NCBI RefSeq assembly: GCF_001194135.2
Contig: NC_068994.1
Location: 43,816,144 to 43,880,143 of the forward strand
DNA length: 64,000 nt
Origin: Octopus bimaculoides
Taxonomy: Eukaryota
Direction: 5' to 3'
In this document: positions 1 through 22,695 of the stretch, piece after piece
Layout of the letters: every line of letters starts with the position of its first letter
How positions within the stretch are numbered: position 1 is the stretch's first letter
Made by a program: the position numbers and the translations under genes
The notes under the pieces: generated by a model
Databases searched by the model: none
What the model was told of the DNA's origin: nothing
What the model saw: only the letters and a program-made list of their open reading frames with translations

Positions 1-492
1 TCTTTCATCCTTCTGGGGTCGATAAGTTGAGTACCAATAGAGTACTGAGGTCGATAAGTTGAGTACCAATGGAGTACTGAGGTCAATGTAATCGACTTAA
101 CTTCTCTTGCTCAAATTTCAGGCCTTGTTTCTGTAGTAGAAAGGATTATTATTTAGGGATATACCAATTTTACTGCCTCTTGTCAGGCAGTGAAAGTGAT
201 AAATCATTGATGGATTAGTAGTGTTTGCTTTCTGATGCTATGATATAATATCTTATTAAAAAAGAACTCCTGAAGCAGCATACATTACATCCAATCATGA
301 AAAAATATAAGCAAACAGAATATATATGTGTTATGTGTGTGTGACTGTGTTTGTACCTGTATATATGTGTATATATGTAAATATGGAAGGCGGACGTTAA
401 ACGATGGTGATGATGATAAAATGTATGTATATTTAGACAAATGTATATATACATATATGTGTATGTGTGTATGTATATGTATGTGACAATAT

Positions 493-524
<32 letters not shown>

Positions 525-575
525 TTAGACAAATGTATATATACATATATGTGTATGTGTGTATGTATATGTATG

Positions 576-999
576 NNNNNNNNNNNNNNNNNNNNNNNNN
601 NNNNNNNNNNNNNNNNNNNNNNNNNNNNNNNNNNNNNNNNNNNNNNNNNNNNNNNNNNNNNNNNNNNNNNNNNNNNNNNNNNNNNNNNNNNNNNNNNNNN
701 NNNNNNNNNNNNNNNNNNNNNNNNNNNNNNNNNNNNNNNNNNNNNNNNNNNNNNNNNNNNNNNNNNNNNNNNNNNNNNNNNNNNNNNNNNNNNNNNNNNN
801 NNNNNNNNNNNNNNNNNNNNNNNNNNNNNNNNNNNNNNNNNNNNNNNNNNNNNNNNNNNNNNNNNNNNNNNNNNNNNNNNNNNNNNNNNNNNNNNNNNNN
901 NNNNNNNNNNNNNNNNNNNNNNNNNNNNNNNNNNNNNNNNNNNNNNNNNNNNNNNNNNNNNNNNNNNNNNNNNNNNNNNNNNNNNNNNNNNNNNNNNNN
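576..999. other. Assembly gap; others at 7190-7383, 11310-11319, 15461-15893, 20155-20807, 35921-35930, 36990-37148, 43921-44641, 60986-61233
   Basis: N runs, mostly flanked by (TA)n or (TG)n. Small exons could be hidden in them. Confidence 0.99.
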
Positions 1000-1041
<42 letters not shown>

Positions 1042-1964
1042 CTTCTAAATGATGATATCTCTTTTTTGCCAATCATTTCTAACATAAGACACAATCCCCG
1101 AAATTTAGAGGATGGAGTATATAATCAATTAAATCCACTACAATACATGTTAAGCAATCTAGTTTATTCATCCTCAAAAGATGAAAGTTAAAAGGCAAAA
1201 GTTAATCTCAGACTGATTTGAACGCAGAACACAAAGAGTGAGAGCAAATAGAGGAGGAGGAATTTTATCCCTTGCTGTAACGTTCCTGTCTATCACTAAT
1301 GAATATAATGATAATGTTCTTTTCTACTCTAGGCACAAGGCCCAAAATGTTTTGGGAGGGGCCAGTCGATTAGATCAATCCCAGTATGCTATTGGTACTT
1401 AATTTATCGACCCTGAAAGGATGAAAGGCAAAGTGGACCTCAGCAGAATTTGAACTCAGAATGTAAAGAGAGACGAAATACCGCTAAGCATTTCACCTTG
1501 TGTGATAACGTTTCTGCCAGCTCACGGCCTTTGATAATAATAATGTTAATCCTAAATTTCTAGGAGAGGGTTTTCTTGATCACATTGTATGCAGTGCTCA
1601 GCTGGTACCTAATTTATCAACTCCAGAAGGATAAAAGATAAAGTCAACCTCAGCAGAATTTGAACTTGCCATGTAAAGCTAAGCACATCGTTTGGCATTC
1701 TAATGACTCTGCCAGCTTGTTGCCTTAATGATGAAACTAAATAATTCTTTCTCATTTTGGCACAAGGCCAGCAACTTTGAGTGGTGGAGAAGTTGATTTA
1801 TATCGATCCCGGTGCTCAGCTGGTACTTACTTTATCCAACCTAAAGGGATGAAAGGTTAAGTCAACCTTGGCAGAATTTGAACTCAGAGCATAAAGGCAG
1901 ACGAAATGTTGTAATGCATTTTGTACAGTTTGCTAAGAATTCTGCTAGCTTGCCACATTAATAA

Positions 1965-2139
<175 letters not shown>

Positions 2140-2144
2140 AATAA

Positions 2145-2339
2145 AGACAAATACATAACAAAAACACCAGGACTAACAAATATATATAACATAAAGAAAA
2201 TAGCACTACTAGGCACTGCACACATCCTACGTAAAACACTTTCAATACAGTAACCATAATATCACCACAACAAACCACAGCACATACCCAAGGCACGGTA
2301 GTGAAGTGAAAGCACGTTATAAAAATAAAACTACTGAAC
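2145..2339 (+). mobile_element. 3' end of the same Dong/R4-like family, in an (AAC)n/(AAT)n tract
   Basis: DKYITKTPGLTNIYNIKKIALLGTAHILRKTLSIQ* plus a 3' UTR nearly identical to 42870-43078, ending ACTACTGAAC(AAT)n. Confidence 0.9.
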
Positions 2340-2397
2340 AATAATAATAATAATAATGATGATGATGATAATGATAATAATAATAATAATAATAATG

Positions 2398-2660
2398 ATT
2401 GAGAAATATCAAGATCTAGCCAGAGCAATGAAGAGATCGTGAAAGACTAAGAGGACATTTATTCTTGTTGTAGTCAGGGCACCCAAACTGCTACCTAAGA
2501 GGCTGAAGGATATTGGAACCAAGACTTGTATTGTTGACCTGCTATTCTATAATCTGCAAGAAACCTAAGAAAGATCCTTGAGATTCAAGGAGACTTATTA
2601 CCACCAAACCTCAAGACAATATTCCTGTAAACTAATAATAAAACATGTAATAGTCATATA
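2398..2660 (+). mobile_element. Second, diverged R4-like RLE family 3' end
   Basis: IEKYQDLARAMKRS*KTKRTFILVVVRAPKLLPKRLKDIGTKTCIVDL resembles EKYQDL..E..R.W....IPVVVGALG..PK.L..IG. Flanked by TAA-type repeats. Confidence 0.65.
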
Positions 2661-3368
2661 TTATTATTAATAATAATAATAATAATAACAATACTAATAA
2701 GAATAATGATAATAATAATAATAACAACAATACTAATAAGAATAATGATAATAATAATAATAACAACAATACTAATAATAATAATGATAATAATAATAAG
2801 GATATACTCAGAGAGAAAGAAAGAGTAATTTCTATATTAACAATTATATTAAGAGTAATAATCCTTTCCACTGAAGGCACAAGGCCTGAAGATTAGGGGG
2901 CAGTAACTAGATGATTTCATCGATCCTCAATGTTTCACTGGTACTTAATTTATTGACCCCGAAAGGATGAAAGGCAGAGTCGACCTCAGCAGAATTTGAA
3001 CTCAGAATGTAGCAGCAGGTGAAATACCACTAAGCATTTCGCCCAGTGTGCTAATGATTCTGCCAGCTTACCGCATTATGTATATTAAGAGTAGTAATAA
3101 TAATAGTAATTATATATGTGAGTATGTGTTTATGAGTATGTGTATACAGGTATATCGATAAACACCAGATGTGATTCATACAAGTATTACTATCACCACT
3201 AAACAGATTAGCTGTCTGTCTCGTATGTTGAAGGAAATCAATAATATATATATTTTTAAAGAACTTTTTAAAGAACTTTCAGCAGGTTTTCTTCTGGTTC
3301 ATGACTGATGCATTATAATCTCTTGTTCAGAAAGCCATGAATGATTAATGAAAATCTCTAAGACTCAC

Positions 3369-3519
3369 CAGGAATTTCTTCATAAGGACTCATATCCTTT
3401 TTATTCTGACTGCTATTTTGCAGTTTATGAGGAGATACATTGCTGCCATAGTGATCAGGAGTTGCAATGAACCTTCTTTCATGTCTTCCAGATGTCATTC
3501 CAACTTCTTGAATACAAGC
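3369..3519 (-). CDS. Pcdh: Candidate downstream cytoplasmic exon of the protocadherin (151 nt, phase 0 to phase 1): ACIQEVGMTSGRHERRFIATPDHYGSNVSPHKLQNSSQNKKDMSPYEEIP
   Basis: Acceptor tgatatctgtcttcttag|G at 3520|3519 and donor CCTG|GTGAGT at 3369|3368. Only phase 0 is open (the other two frames stop early), matching the phase-0 donor at 53328. It lies in non-repetitive sequence. Too short for the ORF track. Confidence 0.75.
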
Positions 3520-4554
3520 CTAAGAAGACAGATATCAAACATGTAGCTTTTTTACAATTGAAATATATTCATAAATAGCTAAGGTATGTATTTGTATTCT
3601 TAGGTGTGCTTGGTGCACATCACACACCCACAAATGTCATGAAATGATTGATGATTTAATAAATTTGTTGTAAGTAAATTACATATTTGCAATTTATTAC
3701 AACTTTTGCATAATGTTTAGAAAGATGCTATTCATAATCCATGAATAGATGCTAATATTTATTGAAATCTCCTGCATTATATATAATATAATATAATATA
3801 ATATAACATAATATAATTTGCTGTCATTACCAGAAGTACCATAGTTTCATGGTAAACTCTCACAGTGTGCTTAATCTCCATTGTGAGATCAATTCCTGGT
3901 TGAGCCACTCCCTTTCAAGTACTCTGCAATTTCTTATCGTGATCAATAGCTTGGAAAGGTTAAAACATGATATGATGTTTTTATAAATACATTTGAGAAT
4001 ACCACTACATAATGTTCATCACACCCAGTTTAGTTCCCAAGGTACAGAATATTAGTTATAATCATGGAATTAGGAACTCACAGCCAGGCATGCTTTTTCT
4101 AAGATCATTGGTAAAGTGAATGAAATAGCAATGACTTGTAATTGAATCTACAACTTTTACCACCACCACTCTGGAAGCAGCATTTGAATTACTTGAATGG
4201 TAAATTGCTAGTTTATCACTTTAGTTAAATACCCTTATCACCTAATATTTTTGTATAATAGTGACCTTAAGTTTTGACTTCGAACAATGATAGAAACCTC
4301 TTATATTTGAAGGGTGCATTGGTTTAAATGTAATCTAATATGGTTCATTAAAAAGTTTTATCAAATATATGAAAAAAAAAAAAAAACGAAAATATATTTA
4401 TTGTGAAAATGTAATTACAAATACTTTTAAAGTAAGACACAAAAAATGTAAACCAATAGGTTTATACACACACATAAACACACATAATGAATAATATAAT
4501 ACAAAAATATTTCTACTATAGACTCAGGGCCTGAAATAAATATACTACAATAAA

Positions 4555-4866
4555 GGTAATGACCCTTTTTAGTTATGAATGACCATGGCACAAGTCTGGA
4601 CAAGGTTGTTTATGGAAAACCAACAGTCACCCATACAGACCAGCCTCTCCTCTTTATGCCACTGATGTTACCCAAGGGAAAGGCAAAGGCCAATACAGCT
4701 TGGCACTCGTGATGTCTCAACTCATTTCTACAGATCAGTGAACTGGAGCAACATGAAATAAAGTGTCCTTGCTCAAGAACATAACACACAGCCTGGTCTG
4801 AGAATTGAACTCACTACTTCATGATTGTGAGCTTGACACTCTTACCACTGAGCCATGTGCCTTCAC
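4555..4866 (-). mobile_element. tRNA-derived SINE (family D)
   Basis: Head GTGAAGGCACATGGCTCAGTGGTAAGAG..GAGTTCAATTC, then TTCTTGAGCAAGGACACTTTATTTC. Related pieces at 5205-5400(+), 17860-17975(-), 56530-56780(-); a chimeric SINE at 23290-23640. Confidence 0.75.
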
Positions 4867-5894
4867 TATCATTAACAAAAATGTTAACCTAATGCAAAAT
4901 TCCAAGTCCTTCTGGAAGGCTATACATAAGGGTGGTCTGAATGACTGCACATGGCTATAGGGTCACAGATTGACTTCACCTACCCCCTAGAATCAGACTA
5001 AGGATACAGAAATATTTTATTGAAATCTTGTCTTTTAATGCCTTTTGTCTGCACAGTTTTGGCAATATTGTGACAGTAAAATAGTTGTTCCTGTCACATC
5101 AAGGTTCAGCTACAATTAAGAAATTCACAGTGGGAGAACAAACAGGATATATTTATTTGGAATAAGAAAGAACATATAAAAATACACAATATTTACTGAT
5201 ATGGAGGTATGAAAGTGAATGTACATGGCCTAGTGATTAAGGTGTTGCACTTATGATTGCCTGATTTTGGTTTCAATTCCCAGGCTGGCAGTGCATTGTA
5301 TTCAAGAACGAAACACTTCATTTCGTGTTGCTTAGGTCCACTTAGCTGTAAGTGAATAACCCTCTGAGTCCAAGAGTCCAAGACAGTAATGTCCAGGGTA
5401 TGTTGCTGCTGCTAGTGTTGCTGTTGTTGTTGTTGATGATGATGATGATGATGAAGGTGCTAGAATCAATTGCAGAATATTGAGTAGAAGTACAAGCATG
5501 GCAATGTGTTCAAAAAGTTCACAACTAGGGCGACTTCAAGTGTGATTCCAGTGTGACTCTTTGGGCAAATGGTTTCTGAGTAAAGTTTCATAAGTGAAAT
5601 TTAGTTGGCAGAAAATAAACTCTGTGGATGATCATATTTTTGATTGTTGCTATTCTTGGGCAATAGAATTAATCCATGATCCACTTTTAACACCACCCAA
5701 CCACTACCGCCACCTGGATCTCAGATACCTTCTGCAGAGTTCACTCTGTTGCAAACATTCAGGTCAGGTCTCCAACTTAAGGATAACTTCCACTATTCCT
5801 TCCACAACTGTAAGAGGTCCTGAAAAGAGTAATGGAGGCACCATTCCTCCTCTGACTAAACCATAAGAAAACAAGTAAAAAGATTAAAAAGAAA

Positions 5895-6450
5895 TCACAT
5901 CCTTCGCTTGCAAAGACCTGTTGAGGCAAGTGAAATCAAAATCGAACTAAATTCGACGACTGGCACCCATGCCAACGTCGTCTCCTTCACTGGACAAGAA
6001 ACTCGGCTTGCGAAGACCTGTTGGGGCAACTGGACATGAAACTCAGCTTGCAAAGACCTGTTGGGCAAGCAAAAGTGAAATCGTGATGGTACCTGTGCCC
6101 AGCGTCGCCTTCCTGGCACTTGTGTCGGTGGCATGTGTAAAGACATTTGAGTGAGATCGTTGCCAGTGCCGCCAGACTGGCTCCTGTGCAGGTGGCACAT
6201 AAAATACACCATTTTGAGCATGGCCATTGCCAGTACCGTCTGACTGGCCTTTGTGCCGGTGGCACGTAAAAGCACCCACTACACTCTCGGAGTGGTTCAC
6301 GTTAGGAAGGGCATCCAGCTGTAGAAACTCTGCCAAATCAGATTGGAGCCTGGTGTAGCCATCTGGTTCACCAGTCCTCAGTCAAATCGTCCAACCCATG
6401 CTAGCATGGAAAGCAAACGTTAAACGATGATGATAATGATGATGATGATA
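5895..6450 (+). mobile_element. RTE-associated repeat / SINE 3' region with internal tandem modules and an (ATG)n tail
   Basis: Repeated modules ..GGTGGCAC(G/A)TAAAA(G/T)CACC.., then GTTAGGAAGGGCATCCAGCTGTAGAAACTCTGCC..CCCATGCTAGCATGGAAAGC..GTTAAACGATGATGA. Other copies: 9485-9900(-), 7750-7870, 37325-37495, 40005-40110, 61234-61440, 63360-63600 (approximate). Confidence 0.8.
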
Positions 6451-7420
6451 ACTGATATCCATTTACATTACTTGAATCTTCTTGATTATTTCTATATAGT
6501 TTATAAACAAAGAAAAGTCATGCTCTGTGTCTGTAACACTAGACAGACATTTCATAAAACCAAACCCACTTTAGACAACCTTCAGTTCTAAAGTAAAAAT
6601 TTACTGTCTTAAAGTGTTATAAATCTAAACTTTCCATCAAAATTTCATGTTAATCTATCTTCCAAATACCAGATTAATAATGCCAAAGTTATTTTACTAA
6701 ACTTCTCATTACTTTAAAATGTAACTGAAACAACAACAATGTATTTCAACAGAAATATGGTAACAAAAGTGTTTTCTGGTTCAGTACTCATAAGTCACAT
6801 GTTGTTGCTGTTTTTGTTGGTGTCGGTGGTCCTATTGATTTTTAGCACTAATTCACCTTAACCTCATTAAAACACAGTAACATACCATTTCTTCCTTTTT
6901 TTTTTTGTTCTTCTAGGAGGGGGTCAGCAAAGAAGCCAAAATATCCTAAGATATAACAGCCTACTGTTTTAAAAGGAATGATTCATTGGAAACTAAAAGA
7001 TAAGATAGTTTGTGACAAGAATGCTTTTGATCACAGGTCTTATTCAAGATTGAACTGGGGCCAAACTACAACAGCAAGTAAAAAGTTACCTTTGGCTAAA
7101 TGCATATTCTTTGATCTATTAGCAACTAATGTCAAACTTATTTCTGGCTATATAAACCTATTAATTCTTCATTACAGTCTGACGTGCCANNNNNNNNNNN
7201 NNNNNNNNNNNNNNNNNNNNNNNNNNNNNNNNNNNNNNNNNNNNNNNNNNNNNNNNNNNNNNNNNNNNNNNNNNNNNNNNNNNNNNNNNNNNNNNNNNNN
7301 NNNNNNNNNNNNNNNNNNNNNNNNNNNNNNNNNNNNNNNNNNNNNNNNNNNNNNNNNNNNNNNNNNNNNNNNNNNNNNNNNNNATATATATATATATATA
7401 TATTTACACATATATATGTG

Positions 7421-7465
<45 letters not shown>

Positions 7466-9484
7466 CTAGCTAGCTAGCCACTACACATTCTTTATTTTCT
7501 CTCTTTGTTTCTTTCTGTGTTCCTTTCTGTGGGAGAGCATAGGCTCAAAATGTTAAAGACTTTTTCACTTCCCCAAGCGTTAAACTAATACATCTGCTTG
7601 TTGTCTACACCACCTGTCTTTGTTTTTTGTTCTTTTGTGAATTCTCCCCCTATATACACATATATATGTATATATACATACATATATATGTATATATACA
7701 TAAGCACTATTCATGTGCGAGTCGCTGCCAGTGCTGCCTGACTGGCTCCCCATGCTGGTGGCACATAAAAAGCACCATCCAAATGTGGTTGATGCCAGAC
7801 TCCCCTCCCCCGCCCCAACTGGCTCCCCTGCCGGTGGCACGTAAAAAGCACCCACTGCACTCTCATAGACACATACATGCATATATATATATCTATGATG
7901 GGCTTCTTTCAGTTTCTGTCTACCAATCACAAGGCTTTAGTTGGCCTGAGGCTATAGTGGATGACACTTGCTCAAGGTGCCACACAGTGAGACCAAACCT
8001 AGAACCACGTGGTTGGGAAGCAAGCTTCTTACCGCACAGCCACACCTGCACCTATATGGTCACAATATTTTACTTCTTTTTTTATTGCTTGGTTGGAGGA
8101 GAAAAAAAATGGTACCCACTGTCCCTGCCCCCACTTTTCTTCTTTTCATTGGAACCTCTGAGTTTCTGAGGAAGAGAGGAAGTCAGGTTCAGACTGGTGA
8201 CCTTAACTGAATTGATTGAGTATAAGCTTGTATGATCAACACTGAAAGGGATGGGAAGTAAAAAAAAAACAATAGCAACAATAACAACAACAACAACAGC
8301 AACAACATTTACAGTCAGCATGCATATGAAGTACAAATCTCAGTTAACATAATCCCCATTAAAATTCTTCTTTCTCACTGAATCTTTAAAAACATAAAAG
8401 AGCTACCATCTTATTACCACCAACATCACCCTCATCATCATCATCATCATCATCATCACCCTCATCATCATCATCATCATCATCATCATCACCTTCATCA
8501 TCACTACCACCACCACTACCACCACCACCACCACTATCATCATCATTGAGGTCGTCATTGTCATCGTCCGTCACCCTCATCACCATCACCACCACCACCA
8601 CCATCACCATCATCATCATTAAGAATCACTATTAAAATAAAGGAAATACACATAAATTCCAGGAAGCAGAAATCCATTCCCTGATAGCAAGTTTGCCAAC
8701 AAAAATAGTCTTGATGAAAAACACCCACTTCATTAGAAAGAGAATGAAACAGTATATTCTAAGCTTCCTAATTGTATTACAATTTGCTCATTTGTAAGGA
8801 AACTTCCAGAAAGTTTATGAATACTACTAAATTGGAAGTGTAAAAATATCAAGTGCTATATCATCAGACTTAAACAACATCAGAAAAATTCATCTGCTTA
8901 CTCAATGCAGAAATCAAAAAGTTTCTACAAAAATGACTAATGAAACAGAATAATTTTCCAAACATACTTCAGATATAAGGCATTCCTCTTCATTATGACA
9001 TTATTTGGAAAATATTGTTGGGACTTTCCAACAGTTATCAAATATACTAAATATTTTAATTGAAATACAGATATTAAAAGAAAAAAAATTTTTTTTCAAC
9101 ATGATGGAAAATAGAGATTTACCATTGTAAATTTTAATTTCTTTCTGCTTATTGATTGACCATGAGTCTACAGTGTCCTGCTGTTGTTGTTATTGTTGTT
9201 TTTATTGTTGTTGTTGTTGTTGTTTCTATTACTGTTGTTGCTGATGTTTTCACTAGTTGTGGCATTATTATTTTACATGAATAAACACAATGGTTAATGC
9301 CACTAAATTCTTTTACAGTAATTATGGTTGAGAGGTAGAAACTTACATAGGAAGACAATAGATCATATTAGACATGAATTTCAAAGAAGTTTTATGTATC
9401 TATATATAGCAGGGCTTGGCTCATCAGCTCCTGACTCACCAGCTCTGGTCAAACTGTCCAGCCCATAGATAATGATAATTATCA

Positions 9485-9900
9485 TCATCATCATCATCAT
9501 CATCATCGTTTAACGTTTGCTTTCTATGCTAGCATGGATTGGACGATTTGACTGAGGACTGGTAAACCAGATGGCTACACCAGGCTCCAATCTGATTTGG
9601 CAGAGTTTCTACAGCTGGATACCCTTCCTAACGCCAACCACTCCAAGAGTGTAGTGGGTGCTTTTACGTGCCACCGGCACGAAGGCCAGTCAAGTGGTAC
9701 TGGCAACGGCCATGCTCAAAATGGTGTATTTTATGTGCCACCTGCACAGGAGCCAGTCCAGCGGAATTGGCAACGGTCTCGCTCGAATGTTTTTACACAT
9801 GCCACCGGCACAAGTCTCAGGAAGGCGACGCTGGGAACAGGTGCCATCCCAATTTTGCTTTCGCTTGCCCCATCAGGTCTTCGCAAGCCGAGTTTCGTGT
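9485..9900 (-). mobile_element. Second long copy of the RTE-associated repeat, inverted relative to 5895-6450
   Basis: Reverse complement of most of 5990-6440. Confidence 0.85.
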
Positions 9901-11321
9901 GTATAATATATATATAGACCAATATAGACCAATAGAATAAGTGCCATGTTTAACAAGAATTAAGTATTGGGGTCAATTCATTTGACTAAAAATTCTTCAA
10001 GGCAGTGCCCCAACATGGCCACAGTCTAATCACAAAAACAAGAAAAAGGTAAAAGATATATATATTAGTATTTGATAACAGTTTGATTCATCTTGATGCA
10101 ACTTAAAGTTTCATAATTTGGGCATGCAAATATAACTCTTCAGACCCAATTACCTGAGCCTGGAAAGCTAGGCTCTTGTGGTGAGTTCTACGAAACTTTA
10201 AGCTACATGGAGTTGAATCAATCTGTTATTAGATAATAATATATGTAGTTCCACCAAATATTTTGAGTGCCTTTCTTTCATTTGTCCACTCAATCAAATA
10301 TATACACACGTTTATGTGTGTGTATGTATTCTATTATTCTTTTAATCTTTTGTTTCTTTCAGTCATTTGACTGCAGCCATGCTGGAGCACCGCCTTTAGT
10401 CAAACAAACTGATCCCAGGGCTTATTCTCTGTAAGCCTTGTACTTATTCTATCGGTCTCTTTTGCCAAACTGCTATGTTACAGGGATGTAAACACACCAA
10501 CACCGGTTGTCAAGCAATGGTGAGGGAACAAACACAGACACAAAAACGTACACTCATGAACACACCCACACACACACACACACACACACATATAAACGAC
10601 AGGCTTCTTTCAGTTTCCACCTAGCAAATCCACTGACAAGGCTTTGGTCGGTCCAAGGCTATAGTAGAAGACACTTGCCCAAGGTGCCACACAGTGGGAC
10701 TGAAGCTGGAACCATGTGGTTGATGAACAAGCTACGTACCACACAGCCACTCACACAAACACATAGAGCACATACATACACATATATATATATATATGTA
10801 CACATTGTACTCCAATAATTTTGGGTTTCTAACTGGTTTTGGATACGATAACTGTTCACAGTGGAAATACCACAAATAATTCACTGAGCTGTAGAATGAT
10901 TTGTGGATAGAAGCCAATGTATTTCTTTTGTTGCCATTTGCAGAGAGAAATTAGGAGAGTAGCTAGTAGGATGTTGTCCATTGTTCTATAAAAATATTTG
11001 TGTACATACATGCATGTGTATTTATGTATGTATTCATCATTTTTTTTTTTTTTTTCTAATCTGTCTTTGAGAGGTAGAGACAATATTGTAATTAGGATTA
11101 GCTTTAGAATTTAGGACTAAAGAAGAAAGATGTTATTTTTTGAAGTTTATTTAAAGCTTACCAGCATGAGTTTCCACCATGTAGTTAATCCTTAGATAAA
11201 CTTATAACGTAGAAAAAAAAAAATCTATAATTTCAATGCTAATACTTATTACAGTATTCTCTCTACCTCACAAAAATAGAAAATGAGTAAAATAAACTCG
11301 CAAAAGCATNNNNNNNNNNTA

Positions 11322-11364
<43 letters not shown>

Positions 11365-11406
11365 TATATATATATATACATGCATGCATACATACATACA
11401 TACATG

Positions 11407-11439
<33 letters not shown>

Positions 11440-11695
11440 TATATATATATATATACATGCATGCATACATACATACATACATGTATATATATATATACAT
11501 ATGTTATATGCATGCAATTACTCTAGAGAACAATGAAATGCATGCTACCTGCAGCAGAGATGGAACTGAGCTGGAATAATAAACATCACCCACAATTCGA
11601 TTTTATGCATGCATATATATATATACATATACGTGTGTGTGTGTGAGTCAGGCGTATACATAAAGCATGCATAATTTATAATATGGAAATGCATA

Positions 11696-12115
11696 GGCGT
11701 AGGAGTGGCTGTGTGGTAAGTAGCTTGCTTACCAACCACATGGTTCCGGGTTCAGTCCCACTGAGTGGCACCTTGGGCAAGTGTCTTCTACTATAGCCTT
11801 GGGCCGACGAAAGCCTTGTGAGTGGATTTGGTGGACGGAAACTGAAAGAAGCCTGTCGTATATATGTATATATATATATTTGTGTGTGTGTGTATGTATA
11901 TTTGTGTGTCTGTGTTTATCACCCCAACATCGCTTGACAACCAATGCTTGTGTGTTTACATCCCCGTAACTTAGCGGTTTGGCAAAAGTGACCGATAGAA
12001 TAAGTACTAGGCTTACAAAAAATAAGTCCTGGAGTCGATTTGCTCAACTAAAGGCGGTGCTCCCAGCATGGCCGCAGTCAAATGACTGAAACAAGTAAAA
12101 GAGATAAAAGAGATA
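11696..12115 (+). mobile_element. Full-length tRNA-derived CORE-type SINE (family B) with an internal (TA/TG)n tract
   Basis: A/B-box-like head GGAGTGGCTGTGTGGTAAG..GGTTCAGTCCC, CORE-like CACCTTGGGCAAGTGTCTT, tail GACTGAAACAAGTAAAAGAG. About 20 copies or fragments in the window, e.g. 10340-10750(-), 13240-13632(-), 34190-34605(-), 41350-41770(+), 41787-42120(+), 47545-47940(-), 51365-51800(+), 59175-59620(+). Confidence 0.9.
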
Positions 12116-12460
12116 TACATATATATATGTATATATATACACATATATATACATATATATATACATAAAAACTACCTTTCTTTCCTTCTCTGAGCATCTG
12201 CTAATACTTTGCATGTACCATGTCCTCGGGTTGTAATTTTTTTTTCTTGTGTGTGTTCTTAATTTTTTTTTGATTTACTATTTACTGCATGCTCACACGG
12301 ACCCCCAGCCTTCCAGCTGACTTTGGAGTACCTAATTCGCGGGATTCTTTTTACCATCAGATTACATTACTTTGTTCATTCGGAACATGTATGTGTGTAT
12401 GTATGTATATTTATATGTATAGATATAGATATAATACATATATGTATTTGTATCTCTTTC

Positions 12461-12860
12461 TCTTTTCTCTTTTACTTGTTTCAGTCATTTGACTGCGGCC
12501 ATGCTGGAGCACCGCCTTTAGTCGAGTAAATCGACCCGAGGACTTATTCTTTGTAAGCCTAGTACTTATTGTATCAGTCTCTTTTGCTAAACCGCTAAGT
12601 TACGGGGACGTAAACACACCAGCATCGGTTGTCAAGCAATTTTGGGGGGAGACAAACACAGACACATAAACACACAAACATACATATGTATATATACATA
12701 TATAAATGACAGACTTCTTTCAGTTTCCGTTTACCAAATCCACTCACAAAGTTTTGGTCGGCCTGAGGCTATAGTAGAAGACGCTTGCCCAAGGTGCCAC
12801 ACAGTGGAAATGAATCCGGAACCATGTGGTTGGTAAGCAAGCTACTTACCACACAGCCAT
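12461..12860 (-). mobile_element. Full-length family B SINE, inverted relative to 11696-12115
   Basis: Reverse complement of the family B consensus along its whole length. Confidence 0.9.
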
Positions 12861-15297
12861 ACAGATAGACACACAGATTTTTTTCGCCTCCACCAGAGTC
12901 AATATTATATATTAACTTTATATAAATATCAATATATATTAAATATTAACCTTATCTAAAGCATACATATAATATAAAACTACTGAGGTATCTAATAGAT
13001 TGTGCAGGTGTTTATTTTTGTCTTTATAAATAATGTTTTTAATAGGACATTAGTTATTAATGTATTTGACAAAATACTTTATGCTTTTGAGTTATTGTCT
13101 TTTACATTCTGAATTCAAAACCTACATATGTCAAGATTACCATTTAGCCTTCTGGGTTTGTTGAAATAAGTATCAGTCAAATACTGGCATTGATTTAATG
13201 AACTGTTTCCTTCCCCAGAATTCGTGGCATTGTAGTTATTTTACTCTTTACTCTTTTACTTGTTTCAGTCATTTGACTGTGGCCATGCTGGAGCACCGCA
13301 TTTGGCCGAGCAAATCGACCCCAGGACTTATTCTTTGTAAGCCTAGTACTTATTCTAGAGGTCTCTTTTGCCAAACAGCTCAGTTACGGGGACGTAAACA
13401 CACCAGCATCTGTTGTCAAGCGATGTTGGGGGGACAAACACAGACACACAAACATATACACACACATACATATATATATATATATACATATATACGACGG
13501 GCTTCTTTCAGTTTCCGTCTACCAAATCCACTCACAAGGCTTTGGTCGGCCCGAGGCTATAGTAGAAGACGCTTGCCCAAGGTGCCACACAGTGGGACTG
13601 AACCCGGAACCATGTGGTTGGTAAGCAAGCTACTTACCACACAGCCACTCCTATGCCTCATTATTAATATTATAACTAGGGCAAAGGCAGTGAGCCAGCA
13701 GAATCATTAGCATGCTGGGCAAAATGCTTAGCGGAATTTCGACTGTCTTTTGTTCTGAGTTCAAATTCTGCTGTGGTCGACTTTGCCCGTCTTCCTTTCA
13801 TGGTCGATAAAAGAAAGTACCAGTTGAACTCTGGTGTTGATGTAGTCATCTTATTTCCTCCTCAAAACCTCCTACCCTTGTGCCAAACTTTGGAACCAAT
13901 ATTAAAAGTAGGGCAAAGGCAAGCTCAGTGATAGATTTGGTAAAGCACTAGACCAAAGAAGTTCTTGTAGTCAGTTACAAGGTTTAGCAGTTTAAATTAA
14001 AATCTTCTTGAGGTGAGTTTTTTTCCTTTCATTTTCTCAGAGTCAATAAAATTATATATTAATGAAATGAAGCGATTAATATAATACCCCAATAGGTACC
14101 TTGTGCTGATATTAGAAATGAATATTAATACTATTATCATAAGTTTTTCCTGTTCTGTCAATTTTGTTTCCATTTTTGCTAAGTGTCTTCTTGACACCTA
14201 GGGCAAAGAAACTTATTGTATACATCGAGAGGTCATTAAAATAAACTCACCAGATTGTTCGTTTACAAAATCAAATAAAATCATGAAGGAAAATAAACAT
14301 TATTTACATGGAAGGTTATCATTCTCACACTGACAATGCTCTTCTCAATACACATGGCATACTAGTTAAAACAATTTTTTTTGCCATTCTTGCAGGGCTG
14401 GTCAGCCAGGGATCATTCTCAAATAATAATAATAATAATAATAAAAAGTAGCAGCAAAAGAATGAGAACTCAATATTGGATAAATAGAGGATTATTTATG
14501 TTATAATTTAGAACAGTAAAATGATATACGTATGTATATATGCGGGAGTGTGAATGTATGCCTGTATATAGGCTTCCATACAGTTTCGATCAACCAAAGT
14601 CCACACTCACAAGGTGTTTGTTGACCCAGGACAATAGTAGAAGATATTTGCCTAAGGTGTCATGCAGTGGAACTGAACCTGCAACCATGTAGCTGCAAAG
14701 CAAACCACCTGGCAACATAGTCATGAGAATGTTCTTTTTCACTCTAGGCACAAGGCCCGATATTTTGGGGGAGGGCATCAGTCAATTACATCGACCCTAG
14801 TATACAAATGGTACTTAATTTATCAACCCCGAAAGGATGAAAGGCAAGGTCAACCTCAGTAGAATTTGAACTCCGATAGTCATGAAAATATTAACTCAAC
14901 AAACCAATTTTTTCACCTCTAAAGAAAGAAGTAAAAAAATACAAAAAATAAACATGGGCTTCTCTCAGACTTACTCATAGAAATTCTCTTTTGATTTGCA
15001 TATTCTCTCTATCTGTGGCTCTAAGCAGTTGCAGTGCATTTAAAATAATGGGATTCATTCAGTATTTGCTATGTTACAGGTTCAATTCTATATGATTTCC
15101 TGTTAGGTTTGCTGATAATAGCACCCCATACATAAAGATTATTTTGTCTAGAAGGACTTCAAATGGGTTTCATTTTTATAAGGTATTTCTCAACTTTTCA
15201 GTAATGAGATATTTACATTGGAATACACAGTTATGTATGCATGATATATATATTAACAAAAACTCATTTATATACACAAAACCCATCACTCACATAT

Positions 15298-15330
<33 letters not shown>

Positions 15331-16305
15331 CAAACACACTGATATATTAAAAAGTATCCATGAATTACAATCTCAGTATAAAATGCTAATGTCTGTGCAT
15401 ATGTATGTTTGCGTGTGTGTTAAAGTGTGCGTGTGTGCTAAAGTGTGCGTGTGTGTGTGTNNNNNNNNNNNNNNNNNNNNNNNNNNNNNNNNNNNNNNNN
15501 NNNNNNNNNNNNNNNNNNNNNNNNNNNNNNNNNNNNNNNNNNNNNNNNNNNNNNNNNNNNNNNNNNNNNNNNNNNNNNNNNNNNNNNNNNNNNNNNNNNN
15601 NNNNNNNNNNNNNNNNNNNNNNNNNNNNNNNNNNNNNNNNNNNNNNNNNNNNNNNNNNNNNNNNNNNNNNNNNNNNNNNNNNNNNNNNNNNNNNNNNNNN
15701 NNNNNNNNNNNNNNNNNNNNNNNNNNNNNNNNNNNNNNNNNNNNNNNNNNNNNNNNNNNNNNNNNNNNNNNNNNNNNNNNNNNNNNNNNNNNNNNNNNNN
15801 NNNNNNNNNNNNNNNNNNNNNNNNNNNNNNNNNNNNNNNNNNNNNNNNNNNNNNNNNNNNNNNNNNNNNNNNNNNNNNNNNNNNNNNNNNNNNATATACA
15901 CATACATATATACACAGACATACATATGCATATATGTTTATTGAAGGTAGATATATGTGTGCTATTCATCTATGAATGCATACATACACACATACTCTCT
16001 CTCTCTCACACACACACATACACACACATGCACACACACATATTTATTTATATTTATATATTTATATAATGTGCATGCTATTATGATCATGACTGTGTGT
16101 ATGTGTGTGTGTGTGTGTGCATATGAGTATGCATACCTATGCATGTGTATGTGTGTGTGAGAGAGAGAGAGAAAGTAAGAGAGAGAGAAAGTAAGAGAGA
16201 GAGAAAGAGATCTTGTACATACACAAATATACAATTTCCATAGCCACAAACATAATCAGGTATATGAAAATGGAAAAATATTGTAGAAAAAGAATAAAAA
16301 GAAAT

Positions 16306-16346
<41 letters not shown>

Positions 16347-16867
16347 CAAATAAATGTCCATGGAATAGAAATTAATTAAATATAAAAAAGTAGCGTCATT
16401 ATAGAACTACCATTATCTGGCATAACAAACACAATGGGAATGTTTTTGGTGTAATATCAAATAAATGAGAAATTCAGAACTAAAAATATTTTACCAATGA
16501 AACCTTCAACACAATGTTGGAAAGAGTATATAGATTGAAAGATTTCAAAATAGGCTGTGTTAAAAAAAGAGCATACATTATACATTATACGTATATGAAT
16601 TTCCAACAACAAACACATACAGAGATATTTAATGTTGTTGTGCTACAGAAATATGTATGTATGTTAAATGACGAATATACAAAAAATATTATTACACATG
16701 AATGTATGTATGTATGTGTGTGTGTATATATATATATGTGTGTGTGTGTCTGTGTGAGTGTATATATGTATGTATATGTATATATATTTATCTATTGATA
16801 TATACACACACACATATATATATATATATGCAATATTATAGTGTGTGTATATTTACATATATACAAG

Positions 16868-16933
<66 letters not shown>

Positions 16934-18147
16934 GATAGATAGTTAGGTACATAGATACTTATGTCTATATGCAGGTATACTTATAATGATATTATAATTA
17001 ATATATATGCGTATATATATACATATGCATACAGCCTCATATAAAGGCATATGAATTTATGTATGGGTTTATGTTTATATGTATGCATGTGTGTGTATGC
17101 ATGTGTGCAATTATACATGTATCTACATGTGTGTGTGTGTGTATATATGTAGATATACATATATATATATATATGCATGTATGTAGATATGTGTTATGTA
17201 TGTATACATCTATATGTACATCTACATATATTTATATATACATAAAAATATATACATACATACATGCATGCATATATAGACACCTAGGTTGAAAGAATAT
17301 GTGTGTATGCATGCATGTGCATGTGCATATGTGCATATCATCATATGTGCATAGGTATAGTCTAGTTTTCTGATGAATTATGCCATTTCCTGGATTAGGC
17401 AAAGTAGTTTTACTCACCTAGCAGCAACGTTTGGAAACATTGTAAAGCCAATGAATTTTTTAAAGAACAGAATTTTCTTCCTTTTGTCTTCCTTTGTCTT
17501 ATATTAATATTTGTCAATGAAAAATAGGATTCTATGTGTAACTTTATTCTTCTTCCTTCCAATGTCATGTTGCATGTGGTCCATTGTTTTACCGAGTATT
17601 TCTGCTTATGCTGTGTACAAGCACACATAAATTCATACATATACACATATATACATATATATATATATATACATAGATAGATATGTATATGCATACATTA
17701 TGAATTCTCCCATCACTAAACAACGGATGAGGGCTCTACAATTGCTTGCTGAACAACCACGCAGATGATTTTGTTTATAGTGATCAAATATCTGTGCTCA
17801 CATAAGCTCACTCCCTCCCTAGATTGAATTGGCATTGCTTGTGCAGGTGCACAAGAAGGCCATGTGTCAGATGTTGAAAGAATTGCAAAGCAGCTTACAA
17901 TGAGCACCGCTTGGTCTGAAAATTGAAACCACAATCTTGCAATCATGGGTACAACACCCTAAACACTAGGCTATGTAGCTTCATGTGCATACATGCAAAC
18001 ATACATACACACATATTTGTATGTGTGTATTAATGTATGTGTACATGTCTATATGGGTACATATATATGTGTATATATAGGTATATGTATATATATATAT
18101 ATATGTATGTATGTATATGTGTGTGTATATTTATAAATACACACACA

Positions 18148-18240
<93 letters not shown>

Positions 18241-19036
18241 TAGCAAGCACAACAATCTTTTGGACGGTTTAAGTTGCTTTAGTGGTATTTTTTTCACTAA
18301 ATAATTGAATTCCAGAGAAGGTTTATGAGTAACACGGCAATCAATGTTTCTGATTAACCTAAGAACAGAAAATCAGATTGAAGGCTGGTTATTGTGGAGG
18401 TCATTGCACTTTAATGATCATAGAGAGAACATATAAGTTTGCAAGTGATGCAAAGTAGAGTTACTGAAATGTTTTGGGAGCAGGTTACGGCTAATGACTA
18501 CAAAATATAGTTGTTTTACATAAAAGCAAAATTTCTTGTCAGAAACAGCCACACAAAGACGTTGAAACATCCCTTCTGCAAGTTTATTTTATTCGACAGC
18601 AAAGGAGCTATTTTTCAGAGAGATAAACTAACAAAAGCCCCTTTATTCTGTCTTTCCACATAGCCTGCACATAAACTAACAGCAAAAGCCGCATAAAGTT
18701 AAACTGGTATGGAGTTTTCTGAAAGATACATATAGCCTTCACTAGTGGAAGCAAAACTCTTATTTAAAGATTGATTCTTTTGGATGAATCATATGTGATT
18801 GCTTAAAAAAGGCTAGAACGACAATGCTAAAACATATTTGAAACAATGGACAACAATCAAAATATCATGATTGATGGGTAAATAAGTATCCTTAAAGTGA
18901 AATACAACAAATAGAAGAAAGAGAAGGGCACATTATCTTTCGAGTAACTCAGAATAGGTAAAGGTAAGCTTGCCAAAGTTTAATGCAGTTTAAATATGGA
19001 GATTAAGATTGTTTGGTATTGGATATTCATCACGTA

Positions 19037-19582
19037 CAGTGTTCCTAGTCAATTTAATTACTGTCACAGGTGGGCAGTCGAAATAAATAAATAGACAAAA
19101 TCCGTTCACTTTTATAAAAAGATAAAAAAGTATGGAAGACTGTACATACCAAAAAAAACTATGTCCATTTACACAGGAGCTCTAGGCAAAATGTTATAGT
19201 GCATGACCATTCTTGGGACATAAGTAATGTGTGTGTATGTGTGTAAAGTTTGATGAAAACCCAATGTGAATTATGGAAATGTATGCGTTCAGTGTGCCTA
19301 GTCAATTTAATTACAGTTGTAGGTGGAGAGCTGAAATAAATAAATAGAAAAAAATCCTTTCACTTTTATAAAAAGATTAAAATGTATGAAAGACCCTACA
19401 TACAAAAAGATGTCCATTCACGTCCATTTACGTGGGAGCTCTGGGTAAAATGTTATAGTGCATGACTATCCTTGGGATATAAGTAATGTGTGTGTAAAGT
19501 TTGGTGAAAATTGGTTGAGAATTGTGGAAAATACGCATTAATCATTATACACACACGTACTGTGATTTATAATATAGTAGAT
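19037..19582 (+). mobile_element. Diverged tandem duplication (period about 253 bp), resembling a Helentron-associated (HINE/DINE-1-like) element
   Basis: Two copies start cagtg..cctagtcaatttaattac at 19037 and 19290. The end reads aagtttggtgaaaattggttgag..cacacac..tttataatatagtagat, as in HINE-type termini I recall. Confidence 0.5.
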
Positions 19583-20109
19583 ATATATGTATATGTATAG
19601 AGTAATAAGGATTCAGATAGAACTGCACCAAGTAGGGTTGGATAAACCTGTGGTCACTTTTTACTTTCCTTTATTTTTTATCCTACTTTATCTTCGGTCC
19701 TCTCCCAGCTACCCATTTTTCTGAGCCTAGTATAATAAAATATCACCTACACCCCATCTCTAGCCTCTTAAAGAACCAGTCTAGTTGACTCCTTTTTCAC
19801 ACTGACCACTGACCATAAATATCATATTACACCCTTTCACAAACTAAATTCTTAACCTAACTCCACCGCTTAATGACCACAACAGCCAATTTTGTGGGTC
19901 ATTCTCCCATTTCATGGTAAGCCTCAACAGACTTCAGCTATGTCCCTGCTGTATTCTTCATATATTCTTTTGTTTTTGAAATTATGTTTCGTCTTATGAT
20001 TATGGTTTTTTGCAAAGAAGTAATATTCTCATTCTTCTATTTAAAAAATGTATAAGAAGCAGCTGTAATGAGCTGACAATTATTCATCATTTGTTATTAT
20101 TCATTTGAG

Positions 20110-20154
<45 letters not shown>

Positions 20155-20982
20155 NNNNNNNNNNNNNNNNNNNNNNNNNNNNNNNNNNNNNNNNNNNNNN
20201 NNNNNNNNNNNNNNNNNNNNNNNNNNNNNNNNNNNNNNNNNNNNNNNNNNNNNNNNNNNNNNNNNNNNNNNNNNNNNNNNNNNNNNNNNNNNNNNNNNNN
20301 NNNNNNNNNNNNNNNNNNNNNNNNNNNNNNNNNNNNNNNNNNNNNNNNNNNNNNNNNNNNNNNNNNNNNNNNNNNNNNNNNNNNNNNNNNNNNNNNNNNN
20401 NNNNNNNNNNNNNNNNNNNNNNNNNNNNNNNNNNNNNNNNNNNNNNNNNNNNNNNNNNNNNNNNNNNNNNNNNNNNNNNNNNNNNNNNNNNNNNNNNNNN
20501 NNNNNNNNNNNNNNNNNNNNNNNNNNNNNNNNNNNNNNNNNNNNNNNNNNNNNNNNNNNNNNNNNNNNNNNNNNNNNNNNNNNNNNNNNNNNNNNNNNNN
20601 NNNNNNNNNNNNNNNNNNNNNNNNNNNNNNNNNNNNNNNNNNNNNNNNNNNNNNNNNNNNNNNNNNNNNNNNNNNNNNNNNNNNNNNNNNNNNNNNNNNN
20701 NNNNNNNNNNNNNNNNNNNNNNNNNNNNNNNNNNNNNNNNNNNNNNNNNNNNNNNNNNNNNNNNNNNNNNNNNNNNNNNNNNNNNNNNNNNNNNNNNNNN
20801 NNNNNNNTCTTAATGAATAAAAATTCTTCTGATAGAATAAATGGGTTAATAGAAACCAATGTAGCAAAGAACACAAAATAACTGTGGTTAGCTCCTGTTT
20901 TTAAGGCAGGAACTCCTTGAAATTTTGGGTATTTGAGTATATTTAAGAATTTAAGGATTGGAGAAAATGCATGTTATAATTG

Positions 20983-21081
20983 CATACTTTATTCCTACAT
21001 ATGTTTCAAAGGATTACAACCTGTGTGATCCATAGGGATCTTTGATATTAAAATTGTAACCTTCTCATCAGGGAAAGCATG
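20983..21081 (-). ncRNA. Type-I hammerhead ribozyme (left arm; sense to the protocadherin pre-mRNA)
   Basis: Exact mirror copy of 21162-21260; neither arm mismatch falls inside the ribozyme. Predicted cleavage after the GUA at 20998-20996. Confidence 0.8.
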
Positions 21082-21161
21082 AGAATCATCTTAAACGTAA
21101 GACAATATGACCGATTATGTTTTCATAATCGGTCATAATGTCTTACGTTTAAGATGATTCT

Positions 21162-22650: not shown

Positions 22651-22695
22651 ATTCTATACCTCGAGATTTCATGCACTGCAATCTTCAGTAGGAAT
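22651..22695 (-). ncRNA. Degenerate hammerhead-like motif (PLE remnant)
   Basis: auuccua CUGAAGA uUGC-agu-GCAu GAAA UCUCGAGGUA uagaau: core boxes, palindromic helix III (CUCGAG), GUA triplet and partial stem I. U.U at the base of stem II is non-canonical. Confidence 0.4.

What the first reader, a model, noticed from the sequence alone, without database searches (positions are those of the whole stretch)
3369..3519. Unannotated cytoplasmic exon of the protocadherin, 49.8 kb from the ectodomain exon
Seen: the phase-0 donor at 53328 and the acceptor at 3520 give a continuous frame ..KRLSASQ|ACIQEVGMTSG..MSPYEEIP. Only this frame is open, and both splice sites are near-consensus. The implied intron is 49,808 nt, and I saw no other cadherin exon in it. 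So within this window the gene looks stand-alone, not a vertebrate-type array of variable exons spliced to shared constant exons. The next (phase-1) exon would lie outside the window or in a gap.
Basis: partly seen in the sequence, partly recalled or inferred. Interest (0 to 1): 0.7.

Follow-up and report, generated by a model that had tools for sequence, protein, structure and literature searches.

The report
Second exon of an octopus protocadherin
The 151-base segment is a real, conserved second coding exon of an Octopus bimaculoides protocadherin gene, but public RefSeq gene models already include it and the stand-alone gene layout is already published, so the finding is correct and ordinary.

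Summary
On the minus strand, the phase-0 donor after 53328 and the acceptor before 3519 join ...KRLSASQ|ACIQEVG.... Exon 2 is 3519..3369 (151 nt) and ends in phase 1 at a GTGAGT donor. Only this frame is open. The window is 100% identical to O. bimaculoides chromosome CM046614.1.

The exon is not unannotated. RefSeq isoforms X1 and X2 (XP_052829077.1, XP_052829078.1; 2015 versions XP_014782864.1, XP_014782865.1) contain exactly this junction. So do models from O. sinensis, O. vulgaris and Argonauta hians. Only the older UniProt model A0A0L8G9V2 lacks it.

Octopus and Argonauta DNA aligns only from about 25 nt before the acceptor to about 70 nt past the donor. All three indels are multiples of three, and dN/dS is about 0.26.

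The gene stands alone. Three neighbouring paralogs in the same head-to-tail array each carry their own homologous exon 2, and the genes do not interleave. Albertin et al. 2022 already state that cephalopods lack shared constant exons.

The exon ends in YEEIP, a motif conserved across the family that matches the classic Src-family SH2 ligand. A signalling role is inference only.

The parts
53328..55709 (-). Exon 1 coding part (794 codons). It encodes the signal peptide, the cadherin repeats, the transmembrane helix and about 90 residues of membrane-proximal cytoplasmic tail. It ends in the phase-0 donor CAG|gtaaat.
   Evidence: ORF. Pfam Cadherin matches at 5.3e-74 with 5 stretches, and Cadherin_2 matches at the N-terminus. 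100% identical to RefSeq P0129/P0128 residues 1-794.
3520..53327 (-). Intron 1, 49,808 nt. It is rich in repeats, contains 7 assembly gaps, and holds two alternative terminal exons used by other gene models.
   Evidence: It contains no cadherin-like coding sequence.
3369..3519 (-). Exon 2, the exon in the finding. It is 151 nt, enters in phase 0 and leaves in phase 1, and encodes the 50 residues ACIQEVG...MSPYEEIP of the distal cytoplasmic tail.
   Evidence: for the sequence. The junction is present in RefSeq and GenBank models of four species. The Argonauta alignment shows conservation confined to the exon and its splice sites, with indels of 9, 6 and 6 nt. dN/dS is about 0.26.
3370..3384 (-). 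Codons for the YEEIP motif, at the very end of exon 2.
   Evidence: Y and the first E are invariant in an alignment of 27 divergent exon-2 peptides whose mean column identity is 38%. 42 of the 120 closest relatives have exact YEEIP, and 83 of 120 matched a loose pattern for it; a few of those are false hits.
1..3368 (-). First 3.4 kb of intron 2. The whole intron is 22,635 or 22,653 nt. Exon 3 lies about 19.3 kb beyond window position 1.
   Evidence: Exon 3 was found at L001 84977/84995-85017. Window position p corresponds to L001 position 65710-p.
46429..46497 (-). Alternative terminal exon (IFLDGVATIAETLPKKEKPLENRL*) used by the older UniProt model A0A0L8G9V2. It sits inside a foldback repeat.
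   Evidence: The region matches itself in reverse orientation, and a second copy lies elsewhere in the intron.
33618..33629 (-). Probable 3-codon terminal exon (DET*) of RefSeq isoform X4.
   Evidence: It is the only AG|GAYGARACN-stop site in the 95-kb locus, and 16 of the 20 bases upstream are pyrimidines. This assignment is inferred, not confirmed.
53345..53798 (-). Gene-conversion tract inside exon 1, covering the end of the last cadherin repeat, the transmembrane helix and the juxtamembrane tail. It stops 17 nt before the exon-1 donor.
   Evidence: 452 of 454 nt are identical to the paralog 89 kb downstream, against roughly 50-80% in most of the rest of the exon.

Best explanation
Window 3519..3369 (minus strand) is coding exon 2 of a three-coding-exon, stand-alone protocadherin gene of Octopus bimaculoides. 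RefSeq calls the products 'protocadherin beta-13 isoform X1/X2'.

Gene layout:
- Exon 1 encodes the whole ectodomain, the transmembrane helix and the proximal tail.
- After a 49.8-kb intron, exon 2 adds 50 residues of distal tail.
- After a further 22.6-kb intron, a tiny exon 3 adds 7 or 13 residues and the stop codon.

This layout is shared by neighbouring paralogs and by the Argonauta ortholog: a phase-0 donor after Gln, an exon of about 151 nt, and a phase-1 donor right after ...YEEIP. Each gene has its own diverged copy of exon 2. Diversity here therefore comes from duplication of whole genes, not from splicing onto shared constant exons. All of this is shown by the data.

Function is inferred, not shown. 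The exon supplies short conserved motifs: VTSG-like near its start, PD(H/Y) in the middle and YEE(I/L)P at the end.
- Most likely (about 0.35): the final tyrosine motif is a phosphotyrosine docking site for a Src-family kinase SH2 domain.
- Alternatively (about 0.25): it is a YxxPhi endocytic sorting signal.

Annotated isoforms that skip exon 2 or end early would lack this module. Exon 2 may therefore act as a switchable signalling cassette.
For: Sequence and splice sites.

Source: the window is 100% identical to GCA_001194135.2 CM046614.1.

Annotation: the exact junction is present in XP_052829077.1 and XP_052829078.1 (P0129, P0128), in O. sinensis XP_036364528.1 and XP_036364531.1, in O. vulgaris CAI9732504.1 and CAI9732505.1, and in the Argonauta hians protein P0002.

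Coding constraint: Octopus and Argonauta DNA is alignable only from about 25 nt upstream of the acceptor to about 70 nt past the donor. The indels are 9, 6 and 6 nt. dN = 0.108 and dS = 0.41.

Structure in five genes: exon 2 is 151, 151, 157, 154 and 151 nt, with conserved phases. Intron 1 is 49,808, 2,680, 38,155, 10,469 and 10,926 nt.

Gene order on the chromosome, all on the same strand and not overlapping:
- 44.13-44.05 Mb (P0007)
- 43.968-43.938 Mb (P0133)
- 43.872-43.797 Mb (this gene)
- 43.708-43.703 Mb (P0004)

Other points:
- No second cadherin exon lies in 95 kb.
- Albertin et al. 2022 (PMC9068888) state that cephalopods do not splice multiple first exons to shared final exons.
- Motif conservation.
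- EPQpYEEIPIYL is described as a cognate Fyn SH2 ligand in bioRxiv 10.1101/2020.10.30.361790.
Against: - I could not see any RNA reads. Support for the junction comes from gene models in four species from several annotation sources, not from counted spliced reads. The 90%-identity cluster of this protein contained no transcript-derived (Logan) member.
- Annotated alternatives use the same donor (X3 skip, X4, UniProt model), so the inclusion level of exon 2 is unknown.
- Functional inference: nothing shows that the tyrosine is phosphorylated. YxxPhi also fits an AP-2 sorting signal. A cuttlefish relative has HREEMS at that position.
- Exon 2 is less conserved than exon 1: about 77% against 88% amino-acid identity to Argonauta.
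Confidence: 0.9

Rival explanations
1. Exon 2 is a shared 'constant' exon, as in vertebrate clustered protocadherins, onto which several upstream ectodomain exons are spliced.
For: The large single ectodomain/TM exon and the head-to-tail array resemble vertebrate clusters (PMC10084454). The 49.8-kb intron could in principle host other variable exons. In other subfamilies, several O. sinensis proteins share almost identical tails.
Against: No other cadherin-coding sequence lies in the intron or within 95 kb. The upstream neighbour (P0133) and two other paralogs each have their own, diverged exon 2 inside their own non-overlapping gene spans. Among the 120 closest protein clusters, only orthologs of this gene carry this exact tail. 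PMC9068888 says explicitly that cephalopods do not use shared final exons.
Confidence: 0.03
2. The segment is a chance open frame with splice-like edges, or a pseudo-exon that gene predictors pick up by homology but that is not used.
For: I could inspect no read-level evidence. One other splice-flanked open frame of at least 150 nt exists in the same intron by chance. The older UniProt model ignores the exon.
Against: Conservation between Octopus and Argonauta is confined to the exon and its splice sites, with indels only in multiples of three and dN/dS of about 0.26. Homologous exons with the same phases exist in paralogs. For related family members, transcript-sized contigs of about 3 kb encode an ectodomain joined to this type of tail.
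Confidence: 0.03
3. Exon 2 is a minor cassette exon. The main products are the tail-less forms: X3, which joins exon 1 to exon 3 in another frame (RQNMVNTKVKSCC*), X4 and the UniProt model. On this view the YEEIP module is present in only a small fraction of molecules.
For: Skip isoforms are annotated for this gene in two species (P0122, P0126). They are also annotated for the upstream neighbour and for the Argonauta relative of that neighbour (P0132, P0136, P0006).
Against: Purifying selection acts on exon 2, and its structure is conserved across the family. RefSeq lists the inclusion forms as isoforms X1 and X2. The skip-form peptide is a frame-shifted reading of exon 3 and differs at its first residue between two closely related species (R in O. 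bimaculoides, H in O. sinensis).
Confidence: 0.15

Closest known systems
Cephalopod tandem-array protocadherin genes (Albertin et al. 2015; Wang & Ragsdale 2017; Albertin et al. 2022, PMC9068888)
   Same: It is one of them. It sits on the O. bimaculoides chromosome that carries the large protocadherin array. It is multi-exonic, has one large ectodomain/TM exon, lies head-to-tail with close paralogs, and shows homogenisation by gene conversion.
   Different: Nothing essential differs. The specific details shown here were not found in the papers I could read. These are the conserved exon-2 phases and size, the YEEIP ending, the annotated skip isoforms and the exact 454-nt conversion tract. The 2015 and 2017 papers could not be opened.
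Vertebrate clustered protocadherins (Pcdh alpha and gamma: variable exons plus three shared constant exons)
   Same: One large exon encodes the ectodomain, the TM helix and the proximal tail. The genes form a tandem array on one strand. Gene conversion homogenises the 3' part of the big exon; for vertebrates this rests on my own knowledge of Noonan et al. 2004. There is a possible link to Src-family kinases: PMC6339937 cites Kohmura 1998 for Pcdh-alpha binding Fyn.
   Different: The downstream exons are private to each gene, not shared. The tail has no sequence similarity to the vertebrate constant region (no Pfam match). Here the homogenised part is the TM/juxtamembrane segment and the distal tail is the variable part, roughly the reverse of the vertebrate arrangement.
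Vertebrate Pcdh-beta and non-clustered delta-protocadherins
   Same: Like delta-protocadherins, it is a self-contained gene with extra small cytoplasmic exons and alternative C-termini.
   Different: Pcdh-beta genes are single-exon. The delta-protocadherin CM1, CM2 and CM3 motifs are reported absent from octopus protocadherins (PMC6339937). By eye I see no [RK][VI]xF PP1 motif in this tail.
pYEEI Src-family SH2 ligands (EPQpYEEIPIYL peptide of middle-T antigen)
   Same: The tail ends SPYEEIP. Paralog P0007 has PQYEEIP, identical over 7 residues to the model ligand.
   Different: The resemblance is in sequence only. Neither phosphorylation nor binding has been tested. The motif also fits the YxxPhi sorting signal.

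Membership tests
Cephalopod tandem-array protocadherin gene | One large exon encodes the signal peptide, the cadherin repeats and the transmembrane helix. | tested here: met
   The exon-1 reading frame covers 794 codons. Pfam Cadherin matches with 5 stretches, and Cadherin_2 matches at the N-terminus. A hydrophobic stretch, LVIIIVVTAVVISIAIVVIITICIV, is followed by RCNRRR.
Cephalopod tandem-array protocadherin gene | Multi-exonic, with its own small downstream cytoplasmic exons. | tested here: met
   Exons 2 and 3 were mapped. Paralogs have their own homologous exon 2 with the same phases.
Cephalopod tandem-array protocadherin gene | Head-to-tail array of close paralogs on one chromosome. | tested here: met
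   Four genes lie on the same strand of CM046614.1 between 43.70 and 44.13 Mb, with non-overlapping spans.
Cephalopod tandem-array protocadherin gene | Expression enriched in neural tissue. | not testable with these tools
   No expression data were available.
Vertebrate-type clustered protocadherin locus (variable plus constant exons) | Several variable ectodomain exons are each spliced to the same downstream constant exons. | tested here: not met
   The 95-kb locus holds only one ectodomain exon. The neighbours use different exon-2 copies inside their own gene spans. The literature agrees (PMC9068888).
Vertebrate-type clustered protocadherin locus (variable plus constant exons) | The constant-region tail is homologous to the Pcdh alpha/gamma constant domain. 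| tested here: not met
   A Pfam scan of the 146-residue tail at E <= 1 gave 0 families.
Src-family SH2 docking motif (pYEEI) | The sequence Y-E-E-I lies in a cytoplasmic segment. | tested here: met
   YEEIP lies at residues 46-50 of the exon (window 3384..3370), downstream of the TM helix. It is conserved across paralogs.
Src-family SH2 docking motif (pYEEI) | The tyrosine is phosphorylated in vivo and binds an SH2 domain in a phospho-dependent way. | not testable with these tools
   This needs phosphoproteomics or a binding assay.
Delta-protocadherin cytoplasmic motifs (CM1/CM2/CM3, RRVTF) | Presence of the CM motifs or of a [RK][VI]xF PP1 site in the tail. | tested here: not met
   Read by eye, the tail contains no [RK][VI]xF. 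PMC6339937 reports no CM1-3 motifs in octopus protocadherins.

The most novel reading that the evidence does not exclude
The exon-2 family is a cephalopod-specific, alternatively included signalling cassette. Its invariant tyrosine motif (YEEIP or YETLP) would recruit Src-family kinases, or control endocytosis, for a large share of the expanded protocadherins. Meanwhile gene conversion keeps the TM/juxtamembrane segment uniform between neighbouring genes. That would be a convergent, differently built counterpart of the vertebrate constant region and its kinase links.
Probability: 0.25. Interest if true: 0.5.

Novelty: already known. Interest (0 to 1): 0.15.

Why it matters
Biologically it adds little. 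The exon is in RefSeq, and the conclusion that octopus protocadherin genes are stand-alone units, not a variable/constant array, is published.

Two side observations may be worth a specialist's glance.
- The short exon is a family-wide module that ends in an invariant tyrosine motif identical to the classic Src SH2 ligand.
- Gene models repeatedly predict isoforms that drop this exon.

If both are real, they give a concrete handle on how cephalopod protocadherins signal, which the papers I could read describe as unexplored.

Tried and rejected
- A word-indexed protein search with the 141-residue tail alone found nothing, although identical proteins are in the database. This was a sensitivity failure of the index for a short query, not evidence of absence.
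- Exact-sequence look-ups for the O. vulgaris protein P0001 and the UniProt paralog P0003 were not on record.
- The O. sinensis gene span (106.5 kb) was too long for its DNA to be returned. The DNA-level comparison therefore rests on Argonauta alone.
- Albertin et al. 2015 could not be opened by PMC id or by DOI, and one paper search was malformed. Wang & Ragsdale 2017 is known here only from citations; I did not try to open it.
- Rfam and tRNA scans of the window found nothing.
- The vertebrate-type constant-exon reading and the chance-ORF reading were considered and rejected on the evidence given under the rival explanations.
- No structure prediction was run. The tail has no domain match and looks like a motif-bearing linker, so a model would not have decided anything.

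Full report
**1. What is at the coordinates**

The gene lies on the minus strand. The 805-codon ORF at 55709..53292 is a protocadherin ectodomain/TM exon. Pfam Cadherin matches at 5.3e-74 with five stretches, and Cadherin_2 matches at the N-terminus.

- The coding sequence leaves this ORF at GCTTCTCAG|gtaaattc. The last exon base is 53328, in phase 0 after ...KRLSASQ.
- At 3521-3520 there is an AG preceded by tttgatatctgtcttctt.
- The sequence from 3519 to 3369 (151 nt) is open in one frame only. It reads ACIQEVGMTSGRHERRFIATPDHYGSNVSPHKLQNSSQNKKDMSPYEEIP.
- It ends ATTCCTG|gtgagtct, which is phase 1.
- The intron between the two exons is 49,808 nt.

**2. Is it more than chance?**

Splice-like edges plus an open frame are not enough. 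One other such candidate lies in the same intron under my own criteria. Homology decides the matter.

- tblastn of related proteins against the window hits only exon 1 and this segment. E-values are 1.7e-27 (O. vulgaris), 6.5e-15 (Argonauta hians), 3.9e-13 and 3.3e-10 (two O. bimaculoides paralogs).
- In a DNA alignment with the Argonauta ortholog, the upstream intron cannot be aligned until about 25 nt before the acceptor.
- Both splice sites are identical in the two species.
- The three indels inside the exon are 9, 6 and 6 nt. Similarity fades about 70 nt past the donor.
- Nei-Gojobori counts give dN = 0.108 and dS = 0.41, so the ratio is about 0.26 over 47 codons.

This is a coding exon under purifying selection, although it is less constrained than exon 1 (ratio about 0.05).

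**3. Source and annotation**

The window is 100% identical, apart from its own N gaps, to Octopus bimaculoides chromosome record CM046614.1 (GCA_001194135.2), in reverse orientation. Window position p equals locus L001 position 65710-p.

The spliced protein I built was matched at 99% identity and 100% coverage by an O. vulgaris model. Its 90%-identity cluster holds these members:

| Species | Accession | Length | Junction KRLSASQ\|ACIQEVG |
|---|---|---|---|
| O. bimaculoides | XP_052829077.1 (X1) | 857 aa | present |
| O. bimaculoides | XP_052829078.1 (X2) | 851 aa | present |
| O. sinensis | XP_036364528.1, XP_036364531.1 | 857, 851 aa | present |
| O. vulgaris | CAI9732503.1 to CAI9732505.1 | 902, 857, 851 aa | present |

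- The two O. bimaculoides proteins are identical to the window translation. The same cluster also lists their 2015 versions, XP_014782864.1 and XP_014782865.1.
- The Argonauta protein P0002 has the homologous junction.

'Unannotated' is therefore wrong for RefSeq. It is true only of the older UniProt entry A0A0L8G9V2 (P0130). That model joins the same donor to a terminal exon at 46497..46429, which lies inside a foldback repeat with another copy in the intron.

**4. The rest of the gene**

Exon 3 is not in the window. It lies at L001 84977/84995-85017, about 19.3 kb beyond window position 1, so intron 2 is 22,635 or 22,653 nt.

- Two tandem acceptors 18 nt apart (tttcag|TTGTTTTCTGTGTTTTAG|CG...) explain the two endings: X1 (...EEIPVVFCVLASKYGKY*) and X2 (...EEIPASKYGKY*).
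- Isoform X3 (P0122...SASQRQNMVNTKVKSCC*) is exon 1 joined directly to exon 3, read in the shifted frame. In other words it skips exon 2.
- Isoform X4 (...SASQDET*) probably uses a 3-codon exon at window ~33629. That is the only matching site in the locus.

**5. Stand-alone gene or shared constant exons?**

No other cadherin-coding sequence occurs in the intron, in the 8 kb upstream within the window, or anywhere in the 95-kb locus.

I located three paralogs on the same chromosome and the same strand:

| Gene | Position (Mb) |
|---|---|
| P0007 | 44.13-44.05 |
| P0133 (nearest upstream; ends 66 kb before this gene's start codon) | 43.968-43.938 |
| This gene | 43.872-43.797 |
| P0004 | 43.708-43.703 |

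The spans do not overlap. Each gene contains its own exon 2.

In all five genes examined, including the Argonauta ortholog, the structure is the same:
- Exon 1 ends in phase 0 after Gln (CAG or CAA|gt).
- Exon 2 is 151, 151, 157, 154 or 151 nt.
- Exon 2 ends CCN G|gt, in phase 1.
- Intron 1 varies widely: 49,808, 2,680, 38,155, 10,469 and 10,926 nt.

The exon-2 peptides of the paralogs are only about 40-63% identical to this one. Among the 120 nearest protein clusters, only orthologs carry this exact tail.

This agrees with the published statement that cephalopods, unlike vertebrates, do not splice diverse first exons to shared final exons but duplicated whole genes (PMC9068888). It also agrees with the description of large ectodomain+TM exons (PMC10084454).

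**6. What the exon contributes**

The tail has no Pfam match. An alignment of 27 divergent exon-2 peptides gives the consensus xxxQxxxVTSxxxxxExxxxxxPDxxxxxxSxxxDxxHxWxxxxxxxYEEIP. Mean column identity is 38%, and only the Tyr and the following Glu are invariant.

- Among the 120 closest relatives, 42 have exact YEEIP.
- 83 of 120 matched a loose pattern for the motif, although a few of those are false hits elsewhere in the protein.
- The residue after the motif starts with a G-initial codon in 70 of those 83, as expected for a conserved phase-1 split after a G.
- A profile search of 1.84 billion representative proteins found only 28 hits. Of the ten whose clusters I looked up, the named ones were octopod protocadherins or fragments plus one cuttlefish fragment (Acanthosepion pharaonis). 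One further unnamed family comes from transcript-sized contigs.

The module therefore looks cephalopod-specific.

YEEIP matches the model Src-family SH2 ligand EPQpYEEIPIYL. Paralog P0007 shares seven residues with it, PQYEEIP. Y-x-x-hydrophobic is also the general AP-2 sorting signal; that point comes from my own knowledge.

My ranking of functions is inference only:
- phosphotyrosine docking site, about 0.35
- endocytic signal, about 0.25
- otherwise an unknown linear-motif function

The octopus-specific motifs listed by Styfhals et al. (Table S2, after Albertin 2015) cover EC1, EC5, EC6, the TM helix and a PP1 site, but not this motif. No held paper links YEEI with cephalopod protocadherins.

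**7. Alternative use**

Skip isoforms are annotated for this gene in two species (P0122, P0126). They are also annotated for the upstream neighbour (P0132, P0136) and its Argonauta relative (P0006). In gene models, then, exon 2 is a cassette. Its real inclusion level cannot be judged without reads.

**8. Verdict**

The exon is real, correctly delimited and correctly interpreted as part of a stand-alone gene. It is already annotated, and the organisational conclusion is already published. Interest is low. The motif and cassette observations are modest leads.

Noticed in passing
window 53345-53798 (-), inside exon 1; compared with L002 and L005: A 454-nt tract is 452/454 identical to the paralog 89 kb downstream, while most of the rest of the exon is roughly 50-80% identical. 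The tract covers the end of the last cadherin repeat, the TM helix and the juxtamembrane tail. The same protein segment is near-identical in the upstream neighbour. The three Argonauta relatives share their own version of it. Together this points to concerted evolution by gene conversion that stops 17 nt before the exon-1 donor.
   Followed up: partly
window 46429-46497 (-) and about 26300-26456: The terminal exon used by the older UniProt model A0A0L8G9V2 lies inside a foldback (self-complementary) repeat. A second copy lies elsewhere in the intron. It looks like a repeat-derived exon or a mis-prediction.
   Followed up: partly
L001 84977-85036 (about 19.3 kb beyond window position 1): Exon 3 has two tandem acceptors 18 nt apart, which give the X1 and X2 endings. 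When exon 2 is skipped, exon 3 is read in another frame for 13 codons (X3).
   Followed up: yes
window 33618-33631 (-): This is the only site in the locus that fits the 3-codon terminal exon (DET*) of RefSeq isoform X4, and it has a strong pyrimidine tract.
   Followed up: partly
window 10315-13675 (4 copies), 34168-34600, 41864-42126, 47548-47937, 48729-48965, 52311-52546, 52851-53155, 59182-59676: An interspersed repeat of about 450 bp occurs in both orientations, with at least 11 copies at 67-91% identity. About 19% of the window is covered by intra-window repeats. Neither coding exon overlaps any of them. The window has no tRNA or Rfam match.
   Followed up: partly
window 2019-2138; 2668-2799; N gaps at 576-999, 7190-7383, 11310-11319, 15461-15893, 20155-20807, 35921-35930, 36990-37148, 43921-44641, 60986-61233: A perfect (CAA)40 microsatellite and a (TAA)-rich array lie just downstream of exon 2. 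There are nine assembly gaps, and several of the larger ones border TA-rich simple repeats (they read as YIYIYI in translation).
   Followed up: no
proteins P0081, P0089, P0101, P0102, P0111 (O. sinensis); P0057, P0064, P0096, P0105, P0107, P0114, P0117 (Argonauta): In other subfamilies, several distinct proteins share almost identical exon-2-type tails and differ only further downstream. This could reflect very recent duplication, gene conversion or shared exons. I did not examine these cases at the DNA level.
   Followed up: no
The word-indexed protein search returned nothing for the 141-residue tail, although identical proteins are in the database. Short queries to that tool can give false negatives.
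   Followed up: yes
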